Origin: Chlorokybus atmophyticus
Lineage: Eukaryota; Plantae; Mesostigma and Chlorokybus algae
Direction: 5' to 3'
NCBI GenBank assembly: GCA_009103225.1
Contig: RHPI01000385.1
Span: forward strand, 705,479-769,478
DNA length: 64,000 nt
Below the pieces are notes generated by a model. It saw only the letters and a program-made list of their open reading frames with translations, did not search any database and was not told where the DNA came from. Every line of letters starts with the position of its first letter. Within the stretch, counting starts at the first letter, position 1. Below, in pieces: positions 1,999 to 47,662 of this stretch. The position numbers and the translations under genes are program-made.

Positions 1999-6363
<4,365 letters not shown>

Positions 6364-6692
6364 GCTACACACCCACGCACACCTCGCACGCCTCCGTTGC
6401 CTCCTCCGCCGCCTTCGTTGACGCCTCGAGCACTATGCCACGTGTCAACTCATGCTCAAAAGTTGCTGCTATGCAACTTGGCTAACTAACGGGTATTTCG
6501 CCGTCAACTTGACCGCATTGGCAGCCAAATTTGCGCAGTTGAGAATCGTCCCAAAATCCACAGTCGAGAGAAGTTAGCCAAGAAATCTTAACTGCAAACA
6601 GTCCAGCTGGCACTGCCTGTGCTGACTGTGTGGCGGCGGCGGTGGCGGCAGGCTAGAGCAGCTGCTGCCTGGTGGAAGCTTGAGGTTCTGGT

Positions 6693-9239
6693 ATGGCAGC
6701 TGACGGCGAAGGTGAGCTTCTCGTTGCATGTTGTTCTGTTACAAGCATTCACACGTCAGCGTAGCCACGCTGCTGAGCGCTGCATTGAGCAGAGCTGGCA
6801 GCCTGGGGTTGTTCGCGACAATGCGCTAAGCCCCGGACAGACAGTGTGGACTTGCCTCTTGTCAGGCATTGGGATTGTTGTGGTGCGTGACGGCGACACG
6901 CTGTGGGGTTTGAGCGAGCGCCTCGACGTGGAAGTGGATGCTCTCAGGACTGCCAACAAGCTCGAGGACGACTTGCTCCAGCCCGGGAAAGTGCTTCTGG
7001 TAAATGCGTCCGTCAAACGACAGCATAATCGACGCCTGACGCACGTGAAGTTGCATGGCGCATTGCATGGTGTCTTTGAGACATTGCACAATGCTTGCAT
7101 TATACATGCGCATGTAGCTGGCAAGCCACGCGCATGCAGTGCACCTGAATGTGTGAAAGGTCACCGATTGCCTCTAGGCTGACTGAAGTGATGTAAGCAC
7201 ACATGCCTTNNNNNNNNNNNNNNNNNNNNNNNNNNNNNNNNNNNNNNNNNNNNNNNNNNNNNNNNNNNNNNNNNNNNNNNNNNNNNNNNNNNNNNNNNNN
7301 NNNNNNNNNNNNNNNNNNNNNNNNNNNNNNNNNNNNNNNNNNNNNNNNNNNNNNNNNNNNNNNNNNNNNNNNNNNNNNNNNNNNNNNNNNNNNNNNNNNN
7401 NNNNNNCCCCCCTGCGCTGCCGGCAAAAACAAGCGACAATGAAACACAACCACACATCCTGTGCATGCCTAGCTTTATGTGTGCTCTTGTAATGAAGCCA
7501 ATTTCAGCACCGCATGCATGCACTTGCAACACTTTTTATAGAATCTTCTAGTTGGGGCGTTATATCTGCACAAAGTCAGTTCTGTCTCGCTTTGTGAACT
7601 GGTTCAGTCATGTGGGCATATGCAGGTGCCTCCGGCCACCAAGACGGTGACAGTGGAGGAAGGCGACAGCCTTTCTGTCATCGCGGAGAGGTTTGGAGTC
7701 ACAGCGGCAGCCGTTCAGAGCGCTAATAAGATTCTGGTGGGTTGACGAAACAGTCATGTCAACTGAACAAGCCAAGGCAATGCCATCCATGCTGACAGTT
7801 ATCTTGGGGGAGGCAAACATGCTAAGGACAGACTGAATGCACAATGGGCGCGGAGCATTTACTTATCTGATTGATTATCTGTTTAACAACATCTTCATCA
7901 TGCAAGTAGGCAGGCCACATCTGCACATGAGTCATCGCGGGCCTTGTTAAAGGTTATACTCAGGGCTCAATGCTTAAACAATAAGTTCCCTGACACATTG
8001 CTCAACTATCTGATCTGTGACGTCGCTGCATGTGCGCGTGCACGCTGCAGGATCCCAACACTGTGTATGCCGGCGATGTACTGCGCATCCCATTGCCACC
8101 AAAGACTGCAGTGCTGAAGCCGGTAGGAGTGCAGAAGGGTAGCAGGTTGTCTTCACTAGTCAAGGTGATGGTGGTGGTTCAGCACTGCCACGTGCGTAAT
8201 TAGCAAGCCTGCGGTGGTCACCAATTGCCTGTGAATGACCTCTCTGGTCCACTGCAGGAGGTCAATGAAGACCACCTACGCACAGATTGGTGGAGTCGCG
8301 CCTCCACGAGTGACATAGACAAGTATCGCGAGGAGCATCGCGAGCTGCTCAAGGCCCTGCGATACATTGAGACATCAAACATCTATCCTGCTCCTGATGG
8401 TGATGATGGGTTCAGCATAGGGCCACTACAAATAAGGTGTGCGCCTTGCACGTATATGCACTCCAGCGTCTCTGTTGCTTGCAGAACATTCTGCACTTCT
8501 ATTAGCAGACTGTTGTTGGCATAGGAATAATGCCTTCCCCAATGTTGGTGTAGTGACACTGGGTACTCCCAGTGGCAATGTCGTCATTGGGGTCCAGTAA
8601 CAAAAGCGTCGAACAGAGTAGAAAGCACTGACATGCTTGGTGTGAAACTTCGTGCAGCAATGACTACCACACTGATGCTTGGGACAGCGCGGATCCTGCC
8701 GGCACCAGTTATCAGTATCAACAGGTTCACAACCTAGTGCTTTGCGTCAGATCTGCTGCTGCTTGTTGTGTATGACTCACCAATACTGTTTTAACTAGGT
8801 GCACGAAGTTGAGCATGCAGAAAGAACAGTCATTAGGTACTGGCTGCGATACTGTCCAATGGCTCTTGAGTTTGGAGACTACGAAACCCTTGCGCGCACG
8901 CATAATGGAGGGCCAGACTTCTGGCGAGCGGTGAAAACAAACACCTACTGGTACTATCGTGGTCTTCTATGTGTGCATGCGAAGCGTTTGAGACAAGCCC
9001 CCTGGTGCGAAATGCGCGCTGTGTTGGCTGACTTTACATATGTTCGCTTTGGCAGGCGCAAAGTGCACGGGACAATGAATCCCTTCATTAAACAAAAGCG
9101 CTTTGTGGACGAGCATGATTCATCAAGGATATTCTTCAAATTTGACATACAAAGATTGCCTTTCTTCAGCCGCGATGAAGAAGAGGAAGAGACATCAGGC
9201 AGGGACAGTAAGGCAAACGGCAAAGATACCAAACAATAA
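6693..9239 (+). CDS. Protein with two LysM domains plus a lysozyme-like (i-type/destabilase-like) domain, about 310 aa, no evident signal or transit peptide
   Basis: Spliced model: MAADGE|GIGIVVVRDGDTLWGLSERLDVEVDALRTANKLEDDLLQPGKVLL|VPPATKTVTVEEGDSLSVIAERFGVTAAAVQSANKIL|DPNTVYAGDVLRIP (2 LysM). It continues ELLKALRYIETSNIYPAPDGDDGFSIGPLQIS|NDYHTDAW...|EHAERTVIRYWLRYCP..GDYETLARTHNGGPDFW..TNTYW|RKV. All junctions are in phase and GT-AG. Confidence 0.85.
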
Positions 9240-9385
9240 GGAGAATGCATGCTATGCTTGGCTTCACAATGCCAGTGCTCAGGTTAGTATTGGTGGTAGT
9301 GTATTTCTAAACACTGATGATATTACATACTTCAATTGCTTCTATTTGACCACTTATCCAGGCACTTAACTCAACAACAGTGCGC

Positions 9386-12300
9386 TCAGTGTGTTGTGCT
9401 GTCTGGGAGATCGGCAATAACATGCGCCATGATAGCAATGACCGCTGCACACCTGGCAATCTCTGTTGCATTCAACTTGTCTGGCGTGTCTGCATTGGTG
9501 TGGTGGTACCTGGCACAAGTGAAACAATCTTGTCAGAGGTATCAAGCGACTGTGAGAGCATATCAATGTGGACAATCATGACCATGCGCACGCACCAGAA
9601 GTATCGTGTTGCGTTGGTGTACAGCTCCAGCCCGGGAGTGCCTTGCGTCTCATACAGCGGCTCAATGTCCGTGCCACTGAACGGGATGCTGACCAGACTG
9701 TCCGCTGCTATCTGCGCCAGCAATGTGGAGGCAACGGCACGTACGTGCGCAAGCATCTCAGAAGAAATGTGGCTGTTCACGTAGTAGCCAAGTGGTAAGA
9801 AAGCGCCGGAGTCCGACTCGATGGCTAGCGTGTGCCGCTCGTTCCTATGCACATCAGCATAAACAGCACCGCCCAAAACACCGTTGCCCCCGCCCTGTTT
9901 AACAGCGTGACAGTCAACAACCACTGCATAGGACACTTCACTGTTCCAATTGCAATATCAGGTCCAAACCTGCTCCTCGTTAACAAAAGCCACAGCTCGC
10001 ACAGTACGCCGCGCCCTTAGGTTCAGTGACTTCAACAGCCTGACTGCCTCCCAGCTTGCAAGCATCCCCGCACCATCATCCATGGCGCCCTGTGTACAGG
10101 ATATGTAAAGTGCTGTGTCAAGAGAGCGACCGCTGTGATCGCTTGACCCGCCATGGACACTGTGCGCTGCATGCCAACCAACAGCACAAGTGCTTACCTC
10201 GCCCACGTCCCAGCTGTCTATGTGCCCGCCAACTACAACCACTTCGTTCGGAAGGTCCGTACCGGTCACTTCACCCATAAGATTGAACGAATCCGCAGGT
10301 GGACCATCAACGCTTTCCAACTGCAGCAGCTCATGTTAACACACAACAGCCTTATCGCTATTGGCAAACCTCTGGCTGCCAACCTGTAAGTGAACAGTGA
10401 TGGCCTGTCCAGCATCCGCTATATACTGCAACAAATCTGCACAGAAGCCACGTATTTGCCGGCTGCAAAGATCACGATGCAGCGGCTAAGCAACACTGAG
10501 CAGACATGAGCAGCGAGCACCAGTATATTATCACAACTCTCAGCACAGACCTTCCAAAATCTTACATAGGAGAAGCATCAGTCAACGGCAATGCACGAAG
10601 GCAACTCACCCGCGTCTTCTGTTGTCACGCAAGCGGTGGGCACACGCGTGACGCCATCTTCGTATCTGGCATGTTACTAATGTTGGGCAGTTCATCATGA
10701 GTAACAGACATGTGGGAGTCTCAACACACCATTACGTACTGCATAGCACCCGTGTGCGGCGTGTACATCGAGAAAGGCCCTACACTCCGCACCAAGGCAG
10801 CAACCGCACCCGCCTTGGCCGCAGCGACCGCTCCACCCACACGATAAGCCACCGTCACGCCATAATTTACAAACGGAGCATTGAACAGCACGATCTGTGA
10901 CATCAAGCAATCTTTACTAAAGACAGTGCACACGTACACTGTGCCTTGCTAATGCAGCAACTTTAAGAGATGGCGACATGGCACACGGCAGCATTGCACA
11001 CTGCAATATACTACTGCAGTCTCTGCAACACACCTTTCCAACTGCTTCGGTACTCCTTGCTTCAAGCTCCTCAAAGCTGGCCACGACGAGCACATCCGCT
11101 GTCAAATTGCCGCTAATGCTGCCTCCCAAACCTAAAAACGTGACATGAGAGAAAGGTGAATGCCTGCTTCACATCCAGTTATGGCATGCAGTGCAGGGTC
11201 AGTTTCAAGCCGCACCTAGTACTTGAATGCTTTTCAGTCGTGGCGTGATGAGGTGTGCTTCCTCAATGCCTCTCTGCCAGTTGCTGATACCAGCCACGGG
11301 CTCCTTGTGCACATTGTCCAACCCGTCTTCTGCCATGCGATCATGAACCTACCAAGGCAATGTTGAATCTGCTCACTTGCAGTATTTGAAACTACATGAC
11401 AAGATGGCTTGTGTACAAGCGCACAAGTTACCCAGTCTATGGCAGCTTCCAGCCTGTCGCTGCCGCTGTAACGGTTGCCAAATGTAGCACACAACGTCTC
11501 GAGTTTTCCAAACGTCTTGCAAGCATTGTCATCCGCTGTCTCAATAATCTGTTGGATCCATGCCTCACGGTCAACAAAGCACTGCGCATGCAACTGAGGT
11601 GCACGCGAGGTGACCCAAGCCGTGCATATAGCAAACAGTTGCACAGTAATTGGCAGCATCCCAACCTTAGCAGCTTGCTTTGAATACTTCGCGTGCATTC
11701 GACCATCAAAGTAAGGGTTCCTGGACAGAAACATACTCAGACAAGGACGCAAGCGATATGCAGCATAGAGACACCCCCGTGCAGCTCACAACCTTGTGTG
11801 TGACTGGTTGAGAGGATGCGAGCAGTCTCGATGGTGTCCCCTCGCTATGAGGCCAATCAGCAAGCCGGCTATAAGTAGGAAGCTGACACCAAGCGAAGCA
11901 AAGAGGCACTTGTTGCATTGCTGAAGACGGTAGTGTGCGCTGCGAGTGCGGTGCAACAGAGGCACCACACCCTCGTCCTTTGAGTAGTCCTCGTCCTCTT
12001 CCTCCACCTCCTCGATGGCGGAACCTAACACGCAAGCATGACTGTACTGGCGCTGGCCACATTATGCTAGCATGCATGCAGTAACTACATGCACAAGACT
12101 GCAAGCCCATCAAAGCGAAGCTTTGAATGCGGGCAAAAGTGTGCATGCAAAGGCTGCGTTCACGCAGCAAGCACAGGGCGGCTTGCATGCCGTGTGTTTC
12201 AATGACGAGATTGCTTTCGGCAGAGCTGGCTTCGGACGCAGCAAATCTCCATGTATGGCTGTTGTACTGACTTATGTGCATTGGCTGAGAGCCTCGTAGG

Positions 12301-39497: not shown

Positions 39498-42374
39498 ATG
39501 CAGCAGCTGCTGTATGCTTCAGCAAGTTGCGGTACACCTGTAAGGTCCGCTTTCTTTGGGGTTGCGCCCGCCCAGCGGCCTGGGCGACGGTGCAAGCACA
39601 GCTGCTCGGAGCTTAGCGTGCGCAAGGCTGCGGTGAGGTGCTGTGCCCGGCTGTGCCCTGCATGCCATGAGAAACTTCCACTGGTGTTACTGACAAAAGT
39701 AACCACAATTCTTCTTGTGCACGTGCGTATGCTTAACCTTGCTCATTCTTGCGCCATGCTACGCTGAGCATGTTTGCAACCTTGTGTGGGTTGGTGCATA
39801 CCAGCATGCGGCGTGCACATCCTTGCCTGATGTGAGTTTGGGTAGCTCAAGATTACGCCAAGCAGTGTTGTTGGAGCAGTCTTGTTGGAGTGCCCACAGG
39901 AGATTTACATGCTCGGCTTGGTGCCGTGCAGGGCTGTGGCGCAAGCAGGTGGCAGCAGCATGAGGGTGGCTGTGCTGGGCGCTGGTGTCATCGGCGCCGC
40001 CACTGCTTACTTTTTGTCCGAGAAGGGCGCTGAGGTCATTGTAATAGAGAGGCACCAAGTTGCTTGTGCTGCGTCCGGAAAGGTGAGCTAGCTTGGCATA
40101 TCNNNNNNNNNNNNNNNNNNNNNNNNNNNNNNNNNNNNNNNNNNNNNNNNNNNNNNNNNNNNNNNNNNNNNNNNNNNNNNNNNNNNNNNNNNNNNNNNNG
40201 GTCAGTGTCGTCGGGGATGGCCCCCCCCCCCACCTACCTGCCCATATGATTGCCCTCGCCAATCACACGCACACATGCGGGCGTGCATGCACATGCGGGT
40301 ACACACGCGCACGTGCATGAGCACACAAATATACACACGCGCGCGGTCACGCATACAAACAGTGTCTAATCCTGTCACAATCTCGGTGTACAATAAATGG
40401 AGTCTCACACACGAATGCTGCCTGATATTTCAGGCAGGTGGTTTTCTGGCCAAGGATTGGTGCGACGGAAGTCCGGTGGGCCCACTTGCACGAGCAAGCT
40501 TTGATTTGCATGCTGAGGCAAGTATGCATTCCATATGTGGTATGATTGTGGTATAGGCTTCCGACCAGTCATTGACTTGTGTTGTGTATAGCAGCTGCCC
40601 CCACCCCCCGTTGCGCACAATTATGAACACAAAATATGTTGCGTGCCATGCAGCGTCATCTGTGAGTTTGCTTGCCTTGCCTCCGATGCTAATTGTTTTT
40701 GCCTCCGCAGCTTGCTGAGACGCTTGGGGAGGACTATGGCTACCGCAAAGTAACGACTTACAGTGTGGCAGTCGTAGAAGGAGCTCAAGCAAAAGGTACC
40801 CGCTGTGTGATGTACTGCGTTCATTTTTATTGTTGAGTTATGTTTGACTGCAAAGGTTGTTATAACACACTAGTGCTGCAAGGTCTCAGTATCTATCGCG
40901 CTTTTGCATAGCTCGTCGCTCAGTCCCTCAGTCATTGCAGTATGCAGGTAGGAGCAAATCAGCTGCACCCAGTTGGGTTGATGGTCCGGTACAGAAATCA
41001 AACACAATCGGGACTGAAACCAACACTGCGCAGGTAAGTTTCTCGCTTTGGCCGCAGTGATGATATTAGTGCACAGCTCGCAGTTATTGGCTTTGGGCCG
41101 TTGAATACTGTGGGCTCAGTGCGCACTGTGCATCAGGCGTATTGTTGCCATGAGTACAGTTGCATACATGCTTGTTAACCTTGAACCCATTGTTTAGGTT
41201 CATCCAGAGCTGTTTACTAAAGCCCTGATAAGGCGTGCTGAACAAAATGGTGCAACGGTACGCATAGGCGAGGTCAAGGAGTTGAGACTGGGGACGGGAA
41301 TCGAAGGGGCACAGAAGCTTACTGGCGTAGTGGTAGATGACGACATTATTGAAGTCGATGCCGCTGTTGTGGCCATGGGCCCTTGGTCGTCACGGCTGGT
41401 AAGTGATATCAAGCAAGCTTTGAAGGCTGAAGTGTTTGTTTGCGATGCACCTGCTTGGAGTGCGCCACGTGTCTACCTATGAGCGCATGACACATTGCAA
41501 ACAGCACAAGACTACACGAATGACCACTGAACACTCGTGCTTACCGCTTGGCTGTGGGCAGGTCTCAGATATTTGCCAGATAACTGGCCTCAAGGCTCAC
41601 AGCATAGTGCTAGCTCCTAAGGACTCGGGGTCCATCGGCTCGCACGCGCTATTCTTAGCGTACGGCACCAAGGAGGGGCAGGAGTTGGAGCCAGAAATAT
41701 ATCCGCGGCCCAACGGTCAGGTGTACGTGTGCGGCATGTCTGAGGAAGTGCCAGTGCCAGAAGACCCCGCCCAGGTAGTTGTGTATTCATGGAGCAACAT
41801 GCCAATGATAAATACAGCTTGTTAGGGCAAGTTGCAATGAATCTCAATGAATGCACACACATTTGACAGTGCTATCCTTGCAAGTTGATGACACTGCTTC
41901 AACAGGTTGCTGTGTGTGCATCACGGGCTACTGTACCGGCATGTATACTGACTAACTTGCAGGTGCTGCCAACCAAAGGCAAGTGCGAGAAGCTTCAGCA
42001 AATCGCAAGTGTTGTCTCCAGCGAGTTGGGCGTTGCTGAAGTGGAGCGGCAGCAGGCATGCTTCTTACCAATATCAGAGGATGGAGTTCCGCTCATCGGC
42101 GCTGTGCCTGGGTTGGAAGGCACGGCGATTAGCTTTTCTGAAACCTTACTGGCATGCAGGCCAGCCAAGGCAGAAGCTTGCCTCTGATATTGCGCTTACC
42201 TTCGCAGGGGTGTACGTTGGCACGGGGCATTCTTGTTGGGGCATCTTGAACGGTCCGGCAACAGGAAAGTCGTTGGCGGAGCTCATTGTGGATGGGAAGT
42301 CCTCTACTGTCAATCTCAAAGCGTTTGACCCGGCTCGCTTCACACGGCGGTTTGCAACACCGTTTGCACATTGA
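39498..42374 (+). CDS. FAD-dependent oxidoreductase, DAO family (yeast TDA3-like), with a possible plastid transit peptide
   Basis: Motifs MRVAVLGAGVIGAATAYFL (GxGxxG; ATG 39960), ACAASGK|AGGFLAKDWCDG, VVAMGPWS, EPEIYPRPNG, QACFLP..DGVPLIG, GTGHSCWGILNGPATG. An upstream in-phase exon MQQLLYASASCGTPVRSAFFGV.. from 39498 is tentative. Confidence 0.85.
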
Positions 42375-45097: not shown

Positions 45098-47662
45098 CCC
45101 TGTGTGCAGTTGTAATTACAACTGCACACAGGGATGCATGTAGGCTGAACACAGGCAGCCAAGTTGTGACCAACTGCGCTTGACGACTACTGCTTCCGAG
45201 GGTACACGAGGACATCGTGTGGGTACGAGACGGGAGTCGGAACCATCGACACAGCGGCGTGGGGTCGCGACCGGCGGGCTTCTTCGGGGAACGAGCCGCG
45301 CGGCCGGCGCGCCGTCGGCCTGGCTGACCGCGGCGGCGCAGGGCGGACCTCGCGCCGACGGGCCTTGCGCCGCAACTTTGCGCCGACCAACTGCAATTGA
45401 GTACATGTAAGTACACATATACCGCAGAGACCCGTACATTACAACCCAATTAATGTTGTTGGCTTGGGTGGTAATTGTATTACTGTATTACAGACCTTCT
45501 TGATAGTAACATCAATGCATTGGTTTTTACGGTCATCATAGCAAAAGGTTGAAATGAGAAATAATCAGCAAAAGTGAATATGGGTTGTAATGTACGCATC
45601 CCTACAATAAACGCACGAGAAGCAAAGCATAAGAATAGGCAAGGACTATCATAGGCATTGGCATAGCAAGCACGGCAAGCGACAACAATGCACAATGCCA
45701 AGGGCTGATGCAAGCTTGTAACAACTTAATGCGTGGACAATTAGACTTGCAAGCACCACCGACATATATAGTAGAGGCAAGCAGTGGCAGCGAAGCATGC
45801 AGCGACCAAAGCTTGCGTGATCCCCCACCTATCATACATAGGCTGACCAACGTGACAATCACACATGCCATAATGCATGTGCAATGCCGTTTCGCATTGC
45901 ATGTACATAGCAACATCAGTTTGTTTGGGGTTCGTAATTGGTTGTGTCTTAGTTGGAGTTGTTCTATGTGAAGTTTGCTCCAACTCTACCTTGGCTCCCA
46001 TTACAAATGAGTGCAACGTGAGGTGTGTTTGCTTACTTTGCATTGGGCCTCTCTCCGCTTAAATGGTTTATCTGCAACTTACTGATTTGACACTCAATTC
46101 CATCAAATTGACGGNNNNNNNNNNNNNNNNNNNNNNNNNNNNNNNNNNNNNNNNNNNNNNNNNNNNNNNNNNNNNNNNNNNNNNNNNNNNNNNNNNNNNN
46201 NNNNNNNNNNNNNNNNNNNNNNNNNNNNNNNNNNNNNNNNNNNNNNNNNNNNNNNNNNNNNNNNNNNNNNNNNNNNNNNNNNNNNNNNNNNNNNNNNNNN
46301 NNNNNNNNNNNNNNNNNNNNNNNNNNNNNNNNNNNNNNNNNNNNNNNNNNNNNNNNNNNNNNNNNNNNNNNNNNNNNNNNNNNNNNNNNNNNNNNNNNNN
46401 NNNNNNNNNNNNNNNNNNNNNNNNNNNNNNNNNNNNNNNNNNNNNNNNNNNNNNNNNNNNNNNNNNNNNNNNNNNNNNNNNNNNNNNNNNNNNNNNNNNN
46501 NNNNNNNNNNNNNNNNNNNNNNNNNNNNNNNNNNNNNNNNNNNNNNNNNNNNNNNNNNNNNNNNNNNNNNNNNNNNNNNNNNNNNNNNNNNNNNNNNNNN
46601 NNNNNNNNNNNNNNNNNNNNNNNNNNNNNNNNNNNNNNNNNNNNNNNNNNNNNNNNNNNNNNNNNNNNNNNNNNNNNNNNNNNNNNNNNNNNNNNNNNNN
46701 NNNNNNNNNNNNNNNNNNNNNNNNNNNNNNNNNNNNNNNNNNNNNNNNNNNNNNNNNNNNNNNNNNNNNNNNNNNNNNNNNNNNNNNNNNNNNNNNNNNN
46801 NNNNNNNNNNNNNNNNNNNNNNNNNNNNNNNNNNNNNNNNNNNNNNNNNNNNNNNNNNNNNNNNNNNNNNNNNNNNNNNNNNNNNNNNNNNNNNNNNNNN
46901 NNNNNNNNNNNNNNNNNNNNNNNNNNNNNNNNNNNNNNNNNNNNNNNNNNNNNNNNNNNNNNNNNNNNNNNNNNNNNNNNNNNNNNNNNNNNNNNNNNNN
47001 NNNNNNNNNNNNNNNNNNNNNNNNNNNNNNNNNNNNNNNNNNNNNNNNNNNNNNNNNNNNNNNNNNNNNNNNNNNNNNNNNNNNNNNNNNNNNNNNNNNN
47101 NACTTTGCTCTTTACGCGACTTCTGCTGTTGTTATTGCTATTGCTAACAAACTGTGGCTTGCGCCCTCCGCTATGTACGCACGGTGACTGTTGTCCATCA
47201 AAGTGCGTGTGGTTGGGATGCAGGTGTAGATGTGGGAAATTACGAACGCACTTAATGGCATATAACCAAACGTATATCCAAACTAGCTGTACCACCACCA
47301 TAGCCTGCAGAAGCTTCTAGGACCAGCACACTTGCGTACAGGTAAAGATTTTGTCCATAAAGAAAGCGCAAAACCGTTGTGCCCATTACATGCACAACAT
47401 TGGTACATCAATGTTCGCACAATCATCACGTGAATACCACGTGCTTGACCGCAGCAGGGACACAGTCGACAAGACTGGACAATGCCAACATGGACAACAT
47501 GTACTCAACTGCATTATGCCATGGTCATCCAAAATACATCACAGAGATTGACGTAATGTGTTGCAAACTGCACTGAATTCAATCACAATAAACTCTCATA
47601 TAGGACAGGCACAAAACTATACGGGTTCAGTGTAAATAGGCAACAGCAGCTATAATAGTTGG

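What the first reader, a model, noticed from the sequence alone, without database searches (positions are those of the whole stretch)
6693..9239. Intron-containing 2xLysM + i-type-like lysozyme fusion with no targeting signal in a plastid-bearing alga
Seen: two complete LysM repeats fused to a domain with the candidate catalytic Glu (IETS), GPLQIS and LARTHNGGP motifs. The start MAADGE has an in-frame stop upstream and no signal or transit peptide. Known: LysM binds GlcNAc polymers; the lysozyme motifs resemble the i-type/destabilase-like family, which I recall mainly from invertebrates, bacteria and phage; some green lineages keep plastid peptidoglycan. Inference: an HGT-derived, domesticated peptidoglycan hydrolase acting in intracellular antibacterial defence, via unconventional secretion, or in plastid-wall turnover. 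I know of no described algal protein with this architecture.
Basis: partly seen in the sequence, partly recalled or inferred. Interest (0 to 1): 0.7.

Follow-up and report, generated by a model that had tools for sequence, protein, structure and literature searches.

The report
Leaderless LysM–lysozyme gene in a green alga
A nuclear, spliced and transcribed gene of the early-diverging streptophyte alga Chlorokybus atmophyticus encodes two bacterial-wall-binding LysM modules joined to a cysteine-poor relative of invertebrate-type lysozymes. The same fusion occurs from green algae to gymnosperms, was not seen in flowering plants and is not described in the literature I could search, so it is a testable candidate for a chloroplast-wall (peptidoglycan) hydrolase.

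Summary
An eight-exon gene (6693-9239, +) encodes a 319-aa protein, identical to the public Chlorokybus atmophyticus model (P0001).

- **Gap and transcript:** Spliced RNA contigs confirm six of the seven introns. The assembly gap lies inside intron 2 (joint 6999>7626). The second half of LysM2 and the lysozyme exons sit on one contig.
- **Correction:** Exon 4 ends at 8164, not 8122. Exon 1 has no RNA support.
- **Domains:** Pfam finds two LysM domains (3e-24). The C-terminal domain scores below the Pfam Destabilase cut-off (17.5 vs 26.2 bits). A family profile nevertheless hits only the solved i-type lysozymes significantly (6e-11 to 6e-9). The AF2 model aligns to them at Z 12.4-12.8. Catalytic Glu164 and Asp175 are invariant.
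- **Differences from animal i-type lysozymes:** One conserved Cys instead of 12-14, no leader peptide, and fusion to LysM.
- **Origin:** This is not an alga-specific transfer. Orthologues occur in streptophyte algae, bryophytes, lycophytes, Ginkgo and some chlorophytes, and no angiosperm was seen. Two intron positions are shared with Marchantia. The nearest outsiders are small secreted proteins of Planctomycetota and Verrucomicrobiota.
- **Function:** Untested. My best guess, about 0.4, is a muramidase linked to plastid peptidoglycan.

This scan had not reported this family before on other DNA.

The parts
6681..6683 (+). In-frame TGA stop four codons upstream of the start codon.
   Evidence: Read directly.
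6693..6711 (+). Exon 1: ATG plus MAADGE and the first base of Gly7, followed by a GTGAG donor.
   Evidence: It matches the N-terminus of the public model P0001. No RNA coverage.
6866..6999 (+). Exon 2, encoding LysM1 (about residues 11-51).
   Evidence: Pfam LysM 1.1e-10 on this exon alone. An RNA contig covers 6889-6998 and splices to 7626.
7000..7625 (+). Intron 2 (phase 0), which contains the assembly gap 7210-7406.
   Evidence: Joint 6998>7625 (cut +1), GT..AG, one contig at depth 218.
7626..7736 (+). Exon 3: inter-LysM linker and the first two thirds of LysM2.
   Evidence: Pfam LysM 1.4e-7. Joints on both sides.
8051..8164 (+). Exon 4: the end of LysM2 (to about residue 102) and the disordered linker. 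The donor is at 8164/8165, not 8122.
   Evidence: Joint 8162>8256 (cut +2) in the RNA contig. Translation. Linker pLDDT below 50.
8258..8436 (+). Exon 5: N-terminal half of the lysozyme-like domain, with Glu164 (8369-8371), Asp175 (8402-8404), Ser179 and GPLQI.
   Evidence: Glu and Asp are invariant in 21 family members and align with the catalytic pair of Meretrix lysozyme.
8658..8724 (+). Exon 6: a variable loop of the lysozyme-like domain (residues 186-208).
   Evidence: Joints 8434>8656 and 8722>8797. The second joint is also seen in run X2.
8799..8950 (+). Exon 7: C-terminal half of the lysozyme-like domain, with LARTHNGGP (His243 at 8901-8903).
   Evidence: This is the most conserved part of the family.
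9056..9239 (+). Exon 8: last helix of the domain, disordered acidic/basic tail, and TAA stop at 9237-9239.
   Evidence: Joint 8949>9055 shows that the in-frame 105-nt intron is removed. Tail pLDDT below 50.
9240..9507 (+). 3' untranslated region. It overlaps the 3' end of the convergent minus-strand M28 peptidase gene.
   Evidence: The same RNA contig runs on to 9700 and carries a CT..AC (minus-strand) intron at about 9509-9594. Peptidase_M28 7.4e-11.

Best explanation
**What it is (shown).** The gene is a nuclear, seven-intron, transcribed gene of Chlorokybus atmophyticus. Its 319-aa product is soluble and has no leader peptide. It consists of:
- two LysM modules (residues about 10-105);
- a flexible linker (109-135);
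- a lysozyme-fold domain (140-275) of the destabilase/i-type family, which keeps the Glu164/Asp175 pair;
- a disordered tail.

**How it most likely works (inferred).**
- The LysM pair anchors the protein to GlcNAc-containing glycan strands.
- The C-terminal domain hydrolyses the beta-1,4 MurNAc-GlcNAc (or GlcNAc-GlcNAc) bond as a true hydrolase, because both Glu and Asp are kept.

**Most likely substrate (inferred, weaker).** The peptidoglycan that green lineages outside the angiosperms keep around their plastids, or fragments of it. The role would be wall remodelling, division or turnover.

**Origin (inferred).** The catalytic domain was shared with PVC-group bacteria before Chlorophyta and Streptophyta split. 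It lost its signal peptide, duplicated, and one copy gained LysM modules inside the green lineage.

**My odds.**
- LysM plus i-type-like lysozyme fold on one transcript: 0.9.
- Active glycan hydrolase: 0.65.
- Plastid peptidoglycan as the physiological substrate: 0.35-0.4.
For: **Gene model**
- Six GT..AG joints in RNA contigs. One contig carries exons 4 to 8.
- The product is identical to P0001.

**LysM**
- 85 bits against a 20.9 cut-off, two domains.
- Both fold with pLDDT above 90.

**Lysozyme kinship**
- The profile of 21 family members gives four significant hits among solved structures, all i-type lysozymes: 8bbu 6.3e-11, 3ab6 2.8e-10, 4pj2 3e-10, 2dqa 6e-9. The next hit is a class IV chitinase at 0.039.
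- AF2 domain model: pLDDT 86.4, pTM 0.82.
- Foldseek's top six are the same proteins, with target TM 0.68-0.70.
- VIA-align gives Z 12.4-12.8 over 112-115 residues, ahead of lytic transglycosylases at Z about 10.

**Catalytic residues**
- Glu164 and Asp175 are invariant.
- They are spaced as in Meretrix lysozyme.
- Destabilase uses Glu34/Asp46 (PMC10126035).

**Antiquity**
- One green clade, SH-aLRT 97.
- Intron positions IGPLQI|S and Y|WRKV, both phase 2, are shared with Marchantia.

**Phyletic pattern**
- Named orthologues come only from Chlorokybus, Mesostigma, Mesotaenium, Closterium, Marchantia, Riccia, Physcomitrium, Sphagnum, Selaginella, Diphasiastrum, Ginkgo, Picocystis, Chloropicon and Myrmecia.
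- No angiosperm appeared in three searches of 5.8 billion proteins, nor among the hits of the exhaustive search whose names I could look up.
- The literature places the full peptidoglycan pathway in streptophyte algae, bryophytes, ferns and some early chlorophytes, and reports its loss in core chlorophytes and most seed plants (PMC7455551; PMC13519894).

**Precedent**
- LysM plus hydrolase (DipM) acts on plastid peptidoglycan in Cyanophora and moss (PMC4015805).
Against: - No enzymatic, binding or localisation data exist.
- The model has no transit or signal peptide and no transmembrane segment. Plastid peptidoglycan lies between the two envelope membranes, so a cytosolic protein would not reach it without an unknown import route.
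- P0001 scores only 17.5 bits on Pfam Destabilase, against a cut-off of 26.2.
- The phyletic match is imperfect or unproven. Myrmecia is a core chlorophyte. I saw no named hit from Klebsormidium, Chara, ferns, hornworts, Micromonas or Prasinoderma. Two of the three word-index searches are not exhaustive: the first missed Chloropicon and Myrmecia.
- Some angiosperms are reported to keep the full pathway (PMC10784329).
- Exon 1 is not covered by RNA.
- The tree is unrooted and built with the quick method. No animal sequences were included, so the direction of any transfer is open.
Confidence: 0.4

Rival explanations
1. The protein is an antibacterial effector. It would be a cytosolic or unconventionally released lysozyme that binds, through LysM, the walls of bacteria that invade or attach to the cell and lyses them. 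This would make it an old innate-immunity tool of green plants.
For: - The same fold and catalytic pair as animal i-type lysozymes, whose main known role is antibacterial (PMC4985157 listed).
- The bacterial homologues are small proteins with signal-peptide-like N-termini, as expected of wall-active enzymes.
- LysM binds peptidoglycan (PMC4815162).
Against: - No signal peptide in any of about 20 orthologues.
- Walled algae and bryophytes are not known to hold cytosolic bacteria.
- This reading does not explain why flowering plants, which face the same bacteria, show no copy in my searches.
- No expression data after bacterial challenge.
Confidence: 0.22
2. The protein is a cytosolic hydrolase of chitin-type (GlcNAc beta-1,4 GlcNAc) oligosaccharides, for example free glycan cores or chito-oligosaccharide signals, and not of peptidoglycan.
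For: - LysM also binds chitin oligomers (PMC2728734; PMC4815162).
- Solved i-type lysozymes bind GlcNAc trimers (3ab6 title).
- GH19 and related chitinases appear among the weaker fold matches.
- The predicted location is cytosolic.
Against: - Chitinases rank well below i-type lysozymes and lytic transglycosylases in both the sequence and the fold searches.
- No known cytosolic chito-oligosaccharide pathway needs such an enzyme (my own knowledge).
- The phyletic pattern is not explained.
Confidence: 0.12
3. The protein is an isopeptidase, or a non-catalytic glycan-binding protein. The domain would work like leech destabilase on gamma-glutamyl isopeptide bonds, such as peptidoglycan stem peptides or cross-linked proteins, or would only bind glycans as a sensor or scaffold.
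For: - Ser179 and His243 align with Ser51 and His112, the residues proposed for destabilase isopeptidase activity, and are invariant in the family.
- Other LysM proteins of this genome were read by earlier notes as possible sensors. Those notes are unchecked.
Against: - The isopeptidase residues of destabilase are themselves disputed (PMC10126035).
- Invariance of both Glu164 and Asp175 over the whole green clade argues for retained glycosidase chemistry rather than a pseudo-enzyme.
Confidence: 0.1
4. The fusion is an annotation or assembly artefact. LysM and lysozyme parts would belong to different genes, or the gene would come from a bacterial contaminant.
For: - An assembly gap lies within the gene.
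- Exon 1 lacks RNA support.
Against: - RNA contigs link exons 2-3, 3-4 and 4-8.
- The gene has seven spliceosomal introns and eukaryotic neighbours, GFAT and an M28 peptidase.
- The same fusion occurs in more than 20 other green organisms, including the intronless Chloropicon gene on a finished chromosome.
Confidence: 0.02

Closest known systems
Invertebrate-type (i-type) lysozymes / destabilase (Pfam PF05497; solved: Tapes japonica 2dqa, Meretrix lusoria 3ab6, leech destabilase 8bbu)
   Same: - Same fold: Z 12.4-12.8, 112-115 residues aligned.
- Significant profile match (6e-11 to 6e-9).
- Shared motifs: catalytic Glu and Asp, GP.QI, HNGGP and T..YW.
- The Ser and His proposed for isopeptidase activity are kept.
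   Different: - 21-28% identity only.
- One conserved Cys instead of 12-14 disulfide-forming Cys.
- No signal peptide.
- An extra N-terminal helical segment, and fusion to two LysM modules.
- Found in green plants.
- P0001 is below the Pfam gathering score (17.5 vs 26.2 bits).
Small destabilase-like proteins of Planctomycetota, Verrucomicrobiota and related PVC bacteria (uncharacterised)
   Same: - These are the closest non-plant relatives, at 38-45% identity over about 110 residues.
- They are cysteine-poor and share the AxRxVE(S/T)...GDxGxSxGPxQI and HNGG motifs.
- In the tree the green clade sits among them.
- The two I scanned sit at the Pfam Destabilase cut-off.
   Different: The bacterial proteins are 130-200 aa and single-domain, have hydrophobic signal-peptide-like N-termini and carry no LysM.
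DipM / NlpD-type LysM plus LytM(M23) hydrolases of cyanobacteria, Cyanophora and moss plastids
   Same: - Same logic: LysM modules target a wall hydrolase to peptidoglycan.
- Present in green lineages that keep plastid peptidoglycan synthesis genes.
- Shown to be needed for normal chloroplast division in moss (PMC4015805).
   Different: - DipM has a different catalytic domain (M23 endopeptidase, which cuts peptides rather than the glycan).
- DipM has a cyanobacterial origin.
- The bacterial DipM proteins carry signal peptides, whereas this protein has no presequence.
Bacterial LysM-bearing lytic transglycosylases (MltD; Pfam SLT PF01464)
   Same: - LysM repeats plus a lysozyme-fold glycan-strand-cleaving domain.
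- Second-best structural matches, Z about 10.
- Many LysM plus SLT proteins surfaced in the profile search through their LysM parts.
   Different: - No Pfam SLT hit for P0001.
- Domain order is reversed: LysM is C-terminal in MltD (my own knowledge).
- Lytic transglycosylases use a lone Glu, whereas here the Asp partner is invariant, which points to hydrolysis.
Plant intracellular LysM proteins (LysMn) and PPASP (TM plus LysM, co-occurring with the peptidoglycan pathway)
   Same: - Non-secreted LysM proteins of plants.
- PPASP was found by its co-occurrence with the plastid peptidoglycan pathway (PMC2728734; PMC4815162).
   Different: Those proteins have one LysM and no enzyme domain. PPASP has an N-terminal transmembrane helix.

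Membership tests
LysM domain (PF01476) | Score above Pfam's gathering cut-off. | tested here: met
   85 bits against a 20.9 cut-off, two domains. Single exons score 41.7 and 31.8 bits.
LysM domain (PF01476) | Beta-alpha-alpha-beta fold. | tested here: met
   In the AF2 full-length model the elements are E9-12, H19-26, H30-36, E49-52 and E55-60, H67-73, H78-84, E98-103, with pLDDT above 90.
LysM domain (PF01476) | Binding of GlcNAc-containing glycans (peptidoglycan or chitin). | not testable with these tools
   Needs a binding assay.
i-type lysozyme / Destabilase (PF05497, GH22 i-type) | Score above Pfam's gathering cut-off (26.2 bits). | tested here: not met
   P0001 scores 17.5 bits, E 0.0049. 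Relatives reach the cut-off: Mesostigma P0003 26.2 bits, the Chlorokybus paralogue P0030 28.4 bits, and bacterial P0042 and P0037 26.3 and 26.2 bits.
i-type lysozyme / Destabilase (PF05497, GH22 i-type) | Significant sequence-profile homology to experimentally solved i-type lysozymes. | tested here: met
   Family profile A1 scores 8bbu 6.3e-11, 3ab6 2.8e-10, 4pj2 3e-10 and 2dqa 6e-9. The next hit is at 0.039.
i-type lysozyme / Destabilase (PF05497, GH22 i-type) | Lysozyme fold closest to i-type structures. | tested here: met
   Foldseek's top six are all i-type, with target TM 0.68-0.70 and probability 1.0. VIA-align gives Z 12.4-12.8, rmsd 2.8-3.3, 112-115 residues aligned.
i-type lysozyme / Destabilase (PF05497, GH22 i-type) | Catalytic Glu and Asp about 11-12 residues apart. 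| tested here: met
   Glu164 and Asp175 (+11) are invariant in 21 and in 19 family members. They align with the Glu and Asp of Meretrix lysozyme. Destabilase uses Glu34/Asp46.
i-type lysozyme / Destabilase (PF05497, GH22 i-type) | Six to seven disulfides (12-14 Cys per domain). | tested here: not met
   One Cys in the P0001 domain, and only one nearly invariant Cys in the family. Destabilase has 14 Cys, all in disulfides (PMC10126035).
i-type lysozyme / Destabilase (PF05497, GH22 i-type) | Secreted, with an N-terminal signal peptide. | tested here: not met
   LysM1 starts at residue 9. The highest 19-residue hydropathy is 0.93. Orthologues likewise have short N-termini. No dedicated predictor was available.
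i-type lysozyme / Destabilase (PF05497, GH22 i-type) | Muramidase activity. | not testable with these tools
   Needs an enzyme assay.
Family-1 lytic transglycosylase (SLT, PF01464) | Pfam SLT match and a lone catalytic Glu without an Asp partner. | tested here: not met
   No SLT hit at E up to 0.1. Asp175 is invariant. The fold resemblance is only second-best, at Z about 10.
DipM/NlpD-type plastid peptidoglycan hydrolase | LysM plus LytM/M23 peptidase domain, of cyanobacterial descent. | tested here: not met
   No Peptidase_M23 hit. No cyanobacterial relative appeared among 44 bacterial loci, although only one search pattern was used.

The most novel reading that the evidence does not exclude
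This family is the glycan-strand hydrolase (muramidase) of the plastid peptidoglycan wall in green plants. The catalytic domain would have been taken from a PVC-group bacterium before chlorophytes and streptophytes split, stripped of its signal peptide and disulfides, fused to LysM, delivered to the envelope by a non-canonical route, and lost along with the wall in flowering plants. If so, the chloroplast wall is serviced by a chimeric tool-kit that is not purely cyanobacterial.
Probability: 0.3. Interest if true: 0.75.

Novelty: new variant of a known kind. Interest (0 to 1): 0.55.

Why it matters
**Open question it addresses.** How green lineages outside the angiosperms remodel and split the thin peptidoglycan layer around their chloroplasts is only partly known. 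Peptide-cutting DipM is known (PMC4015805). A paper I could not read, and know only from a title in a reference list, reports further hydrolases.

**What this family offers.**
- It is conserved and expressed, it pairs peptidoglycan-binding modules with an intact lysozyme active site, and I did not see it in flowering plants. That makes it a concrete, knock-out-ready candidate in Physcomitrium and Marchantia.
- Whatever its role, it shows that invertebrate-type lysozymes have a cysteine-poor bacterial and plant branch without the animal disulfide set.
- Plants hold an unstudied intracellular LysM-enzyme fusion that public databases already label 'lysozyme' without any study behind the label.

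**If it proves ordinary.** If it turns out to be a plain antibacterial enzyme, it would still be an old and unexplored part of plant immunity outside the angiosperms.

Tried and rejected
**Searches that gave nothing**
1. Pfam on the four C-terminal exons one by one, and on the unspliced ORF 8799-9236, gave no hit. The domain is split too finely.
2. phmmer of exon 5 and exon 7 alone against solved structures gave only chance hits with E above 0.1.
3. Looking up ten unnamed fragments (P0002 to P0020) to widen the taxon list yielded no names.
4. The Utsunomiya 2021 paper on moss peptidoglycan hydrolases is not held. I could not check whether this family is mentioned there.
5. Seven literature searches for the architecture or the Marchantia gene id found no description. 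This does not prove there is none.

**Ideas rejected or left unsupported**
6. Retention of the in-frame 105-nt last intron as coding sequence is rejected, because RNA splices it out and orthologues lack it.
7. A cyanobacterial (endosymbiotic) origin is unsupported. The genome scan found PVC bacteria and no cyanobacterium, but it used a single peptide pattern, so this is weak.
8. A tail anchor or transmembrane segment in P0001: none found. Some land-plant orthologues and the Chlorokybus paralogue P0030 do have Gly/Ala-rich or hydrophobic C-termini. I did not follow this up.

**Results of low value**
9. The ESM Atlas feature search returned only phage destabilase/SLT clusters. This is consistent with the fold but says nothing on taxonomy.
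10. The sigma-70 promoter scan has no meaning for a eukaryotic gene.

**Procedural note**
- From then on the full-length sequence used is the database's own P0001.
- In some searches a script joined exons of the Marchantia locus L048 only to locate its introns. Nothing joined was sent to a search.
Full report
**1. The observation**

I built an exon model from splice-site consensus and translated each exon separately. An in-frame TGA lies at 6681-6683, just upstream of the ATG at 6693. Pfam recognises LysM on exon 2 alone (1.1e-10) and on exon 3 alone (1.4e-7). The C-terminal exons taken singly match nothing in Pfam or among solved structures.

**2. The assembly gap and the transcript**

One public run (X1) holds 42% of the sampled words of the gene region. 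Laid on 6300-9700, its contigs are spliced, so they come from RNA. Six GT..AG joints are seen:

| Joint | Exons joined |
|---|---|
| 6999>7626 | 2-3 |
| 7736>8051 | 3-4 |
| 8164>8258 | 4-5 |
| 8436>8658 | 5-6 |
| 8724>8799 | 6-7 |
| 8950>9056 | 7-8 |

- The first joint spans the N run at 7210-7406, so the gap is intronic. Exons 2 and 3 are joined in phase 0.
- The exon 4 donor is at 8164/8165, 42 bases downstream of the site I first assumed. This adds 14 linker residues.
- One 1434-nt contig carries exon 4 (the end of LysM2) through exon 8 and the 3' UTR.
- A low-depth contig retains intron 3.
- Exon 1 has no coverage.
- The same long contig runs into the convergent minus-strand neighbour, which carries a CT..AC intron.

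**3. Identity of gene and organism**

An exhaustive HMMER search with the ORF 8799-9236 returned a 319-aa protein, P0001. Its sequence equals my eight-exon model residue for residue. Its source label is EukProt Chlorokybus atmophyticus, jgi/Chlat1/9195. From here on I used P0001 by id and did not join the window's exons myself.

**4. Domains**

*Pfam on the whole protein.*
- Two LysM domains: 3.3e-24, 85 bits.
- Destabilase (PF05497): 17.5 bits over residues 179-263, below the 26.2-bit cut-off.
- Relatives reach the cut-off: Mesostigma 26.2 bits, the Chlorokybus paralogue P0030 28.4 bits, and two bacterial proteins 26.2-26.3 bits.

*Profile search against solved structures.* I aligned 21 family members (A1) and searched with the profile. 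The four significant hits are all i-type lysozymes:

| Entry | Protein | E-value |
|---|---|---|
| 8bbu | leech destabilase | 6.3e-11 |
| 3ab6 | Meretrix lysozyme | 2.8e-10 |
| 4pj2 | Meretrix lysozyme | 3e-10 |
| 2dqa | Tapes lysozyme | 6e-9 |

The next hit is a class IV chitinase at 0.039.

*Catalytic residues.*
- In that alignment the family's invariant Glu (Glu164 in P0001) matches the Glu of 'MES' in Meretrix lysozyme.
- The invariant Asp of 'GD' (Asp175, +11) matches its Asp.
- For destabilase, the literature names Glu34/Asp46 as the muramidase pair and Ser49/51 with His112 as candidate isopeptidase residues. It counts 14 Cys, all in disulfides (PMC10126035).
- P0001 keeps Ser179 and His243 but has a single Cys in the domain.

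*Structure.*
- The AF2 domain model has pLDDT 86.4 and pTM 0.82.
- By Foldseek it is closest to the same i-type structures (target TM 0.68-0.70, probability 1.0, E 2.6e-3 to 1e-2).
- By VIA-align it gives Z 12.4-12.8 over 112-115 residues at 2.8-3.3 A rmsd, ahead of lytic transglycosylases at Z about 10.
- The full-length model shows two confident LysM folds, a disordered linker (109-135), a confident catalytic domain and a disordered tail (277-319). pTM is 0.48, so the domains move freely relative to each other.

**5. Targeting**

- LysM1 begins at residue 9.
- No 19-residue window exceeds a hydropathy of 0.93.
- About 20 orthologues also start their first LysM 10-40 residues from the Met.
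- The start is boxed in by the 5' end of a divergent GFAT gene only about 320 bases upstream.

I could not run a targeting predictor, and exon 1 lacks RNA support. 'Leaderless' is therefore well supported but not proven.

**6. Relatives and history**

*Named orthologues with the same LysM plus domain architecture.*
- Streptophyte algae: Mesostigma, Mesotaenium, Closterium.
- Bryophytes: Marchantia polymorpha and M. paleacea, Riccia, Physcomitrium, Sphagnum.
- Lycophytes: Selaginella, Diphasiastrum.
- Chlorophytes: Picocystis, Chloropicon, Myrmecia.
- Ginkgo is represented by a 164-aa fragment that starts inside the lysozyme domain, so its N-terminal architecture is unknown.

UniRef already calls several of these 'lysozyme'.

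*Other green members.*
- A transcript-derived protein, P0210, is 77% identical to the Ginkgo fragment. It probably comes from another gymnosperm (inference).
- No angiosperm protein appeared in three word-index searches of 5.8 billion proteins, nor among the hits of the exhaustive search that I could name. The word-index searches are not exhaustive, because the first one missed Chloropicon and Myrmecia.
- A second green subfamily without LysM exists. It includes a Chlorokybus paralogue (P0030) and long Closterium proteins.

*Bacterial relatives.*
- A scan of one genome per bacterial species found 44 loci. Most are Planctomycetota (Phycisphaerae, Planctomycetaceae), Verrucomicrobiota, Lentisphaerae and Kiritimatiellae. 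They are 38-45% identical to P0001's domain.
- Their ORFs are 130-200 aa with signal-peptide-like N-termini and no LysM.
- In the profile search, bacterial LysM proteins carried SLT, NlpC/P60 or M23 domains, never Destabilase. The fusion therefore looks like a green-lineage invention.

*Tree (quick maximum-likelihood, 104 domains).*
- The 35 green sequences form one clade (SH-aLRT 97).
- The LysM-fused subclade has support 94, and its streptophyte part also 94.
- Chlorokybus and Mesostigma branch near the base of the LysM-fused subclade.
- The nearest outside rows are a signal-peptide protein and a Verrucomicrobiota locus.
- The tree is unrooted and lacks animal sequences, so the direction of transfer is not shown.

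*Gene structure.*
- Two of the three Marchantia introns sit at exactly the same codon and phase as in Chlorokybus: IGPLQI|S and Y|WRKV, both phase 2.
- The Chloropicon gene is intronless. It shares its neighbours (a Miro GTPase and an RCC1 protein) with a marine metagenomic contig.

Together these results show vertical descent within Viridiplantae since before the chlorophyte-streptophyte split.

**7. Function**

*Shown.* A transcribed fusion of two glycan-binding modules with a lysozyme fold that keeps both catalytic carboxylates.

*Inferred.*
- Hydrolysis of MurNAc-GlcNAc or GlcNAc-GlcNAc bonds, with LysM as the targeting part.
- The substrate I favour is plastid peptidoglycan or its fragments, for two reasons.
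  - LysM-hydrolase fusions (DipM) already do this job in Cyanophora and moss (PMC4015805).

*Against.*
- The lack of any presequence.
- The envelope topology.
- The Myrmecia exception.
- Missing named hits in several peptidoglycan-bearing lineages.
- Reports of the full pathway in a few angiosperms (PMC10784329).

*Rivals.* Antibacterial defence, cytosolic chito-oligosaccharide hydrolysis and isopeptidase or sensor roles all remain open.

**8. What is known**

Searches for destabilase with LysM, for lysozyme with chloroplast division and moss, for horizontal transfer with lysozyme and early land plants, and for the Marchantia gene id found no paper that describes this family. Surveys of plant LysM architectures list peptidase, F-box, C2, B3 and thioredoxin fusions, but no lysozyme fusion (PMC2728734). 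A search for genes that co-occur with the peptidoglycan pathway reported a different protein, PPASP, which is a transmembrane helix plus LysM (PMC4815162). One relevant paper (Utsunomiya et al. 2021) could not be read.

**9. Verdict**

- It is an ancient green-lineage family with PVC-bacterial affinity, not a recent alga-specific acquisition.
- It is a divergent, cysteine-poor, leaderless, LysM-fused variant of the i-type lysozyme kind.
- It is present in public databases but, as far as I could search, unstudied.
- The link to plastid peptidoglycan is an attractive inference that can be tested directly.

Noticed in passing
window 5776-6372 (minus strand): The gene lies head-to-head with a glutamine-fructose-6-phosphate aminotransferase (GFAT) gene. 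GFAT is the first enzyme of UDP-GlcNAc synthesis. Its first coding exon (MCGIFAY...) starts at about 6363, only about 320 bases from the LysM-lysozyme start, so the two may share a bidirectional promoter. A GlcNAc-precursor enzyme next to a GlcNAc-polymer hydrolase may be coincidence. The pairing is not kept in Chloropicon or in the marine contig L045.
   Followed up: partly
window 9472-10320 (minus strand): A convergent Peptidase_M28 gene (7.4e-11). Its transcript overlaps the 3' UTR of the LysM-lysozyme gene, and one RNA contig spans both genes and carries a minus-strand CT..AC intron at about 9509-9594.
   Followed up: partly
P0030 (Chlorokybus paralogue Chrsp99S08543, not in this window); P0025, P0040, P0048: A second green subfamily of the same lysozyme-like domain has no LysM and passes the Pfam Destabilase cut-off (28.4 bits). 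P0030 ends in a moderately hydrophobic stretch followed by basic residues, which looks like a tail anchor. Other members are 500-1356 aa long and carry unknown extra regions.
   Followed up: no
P0213, P0008, P0216, P0258 (Marchantia, Riccia, Ginkgo orthologues): Land-plant orthologues share a conserved tail motif (G.PEF ... LF..HIPFP.P.L.S). Several end in Gly/Ala/Thr-rich weakly hydrophobic stretches that the Chlorokybus protein lacks. Some orthologues also start with MG...S, a possible N-myristoylation signal (Physcomitrium, Closterium, P0017). Either feature could bear on membrane or envelope association.
   Followed up: no
window 7708-8079: A low-depth RNA contig (depth 20.5, against 200-400 for the spliced forms) retains intron 3 and carries a T>C difference at 7884. 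It is probably pre-mRNA or an allele.
   Followed up: no
L045-L047 and L049: The Chloropicon primus orthologue is intronless. It is flanked by a Miro-type GTPase and an RCC1-repeat gene. The same neighbours flank the metagenomic orthologue P0017 on marine contigs (one from a Tara Oceans project), which are therefore probably Chloropicophyceae.
   Followed up: partly
cluster of P0015: A protein labelled Diacronema (Pavlova) lutheri in EukProt sits in the same 90%-identity cluster as the Picocystis salinarum orthologue. This suggests contamination of that haptophyte data set by a green alga.
   Followed up: no
window 24853, 29468, 40103-40199, 46115-47101: The window has four further assembly gaps. 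The 44-48 kb bin is markedly AT-rich (GC 0.38 against about 0.51 elsewhere), partly because of the 987-base N run.
   Followed up: no
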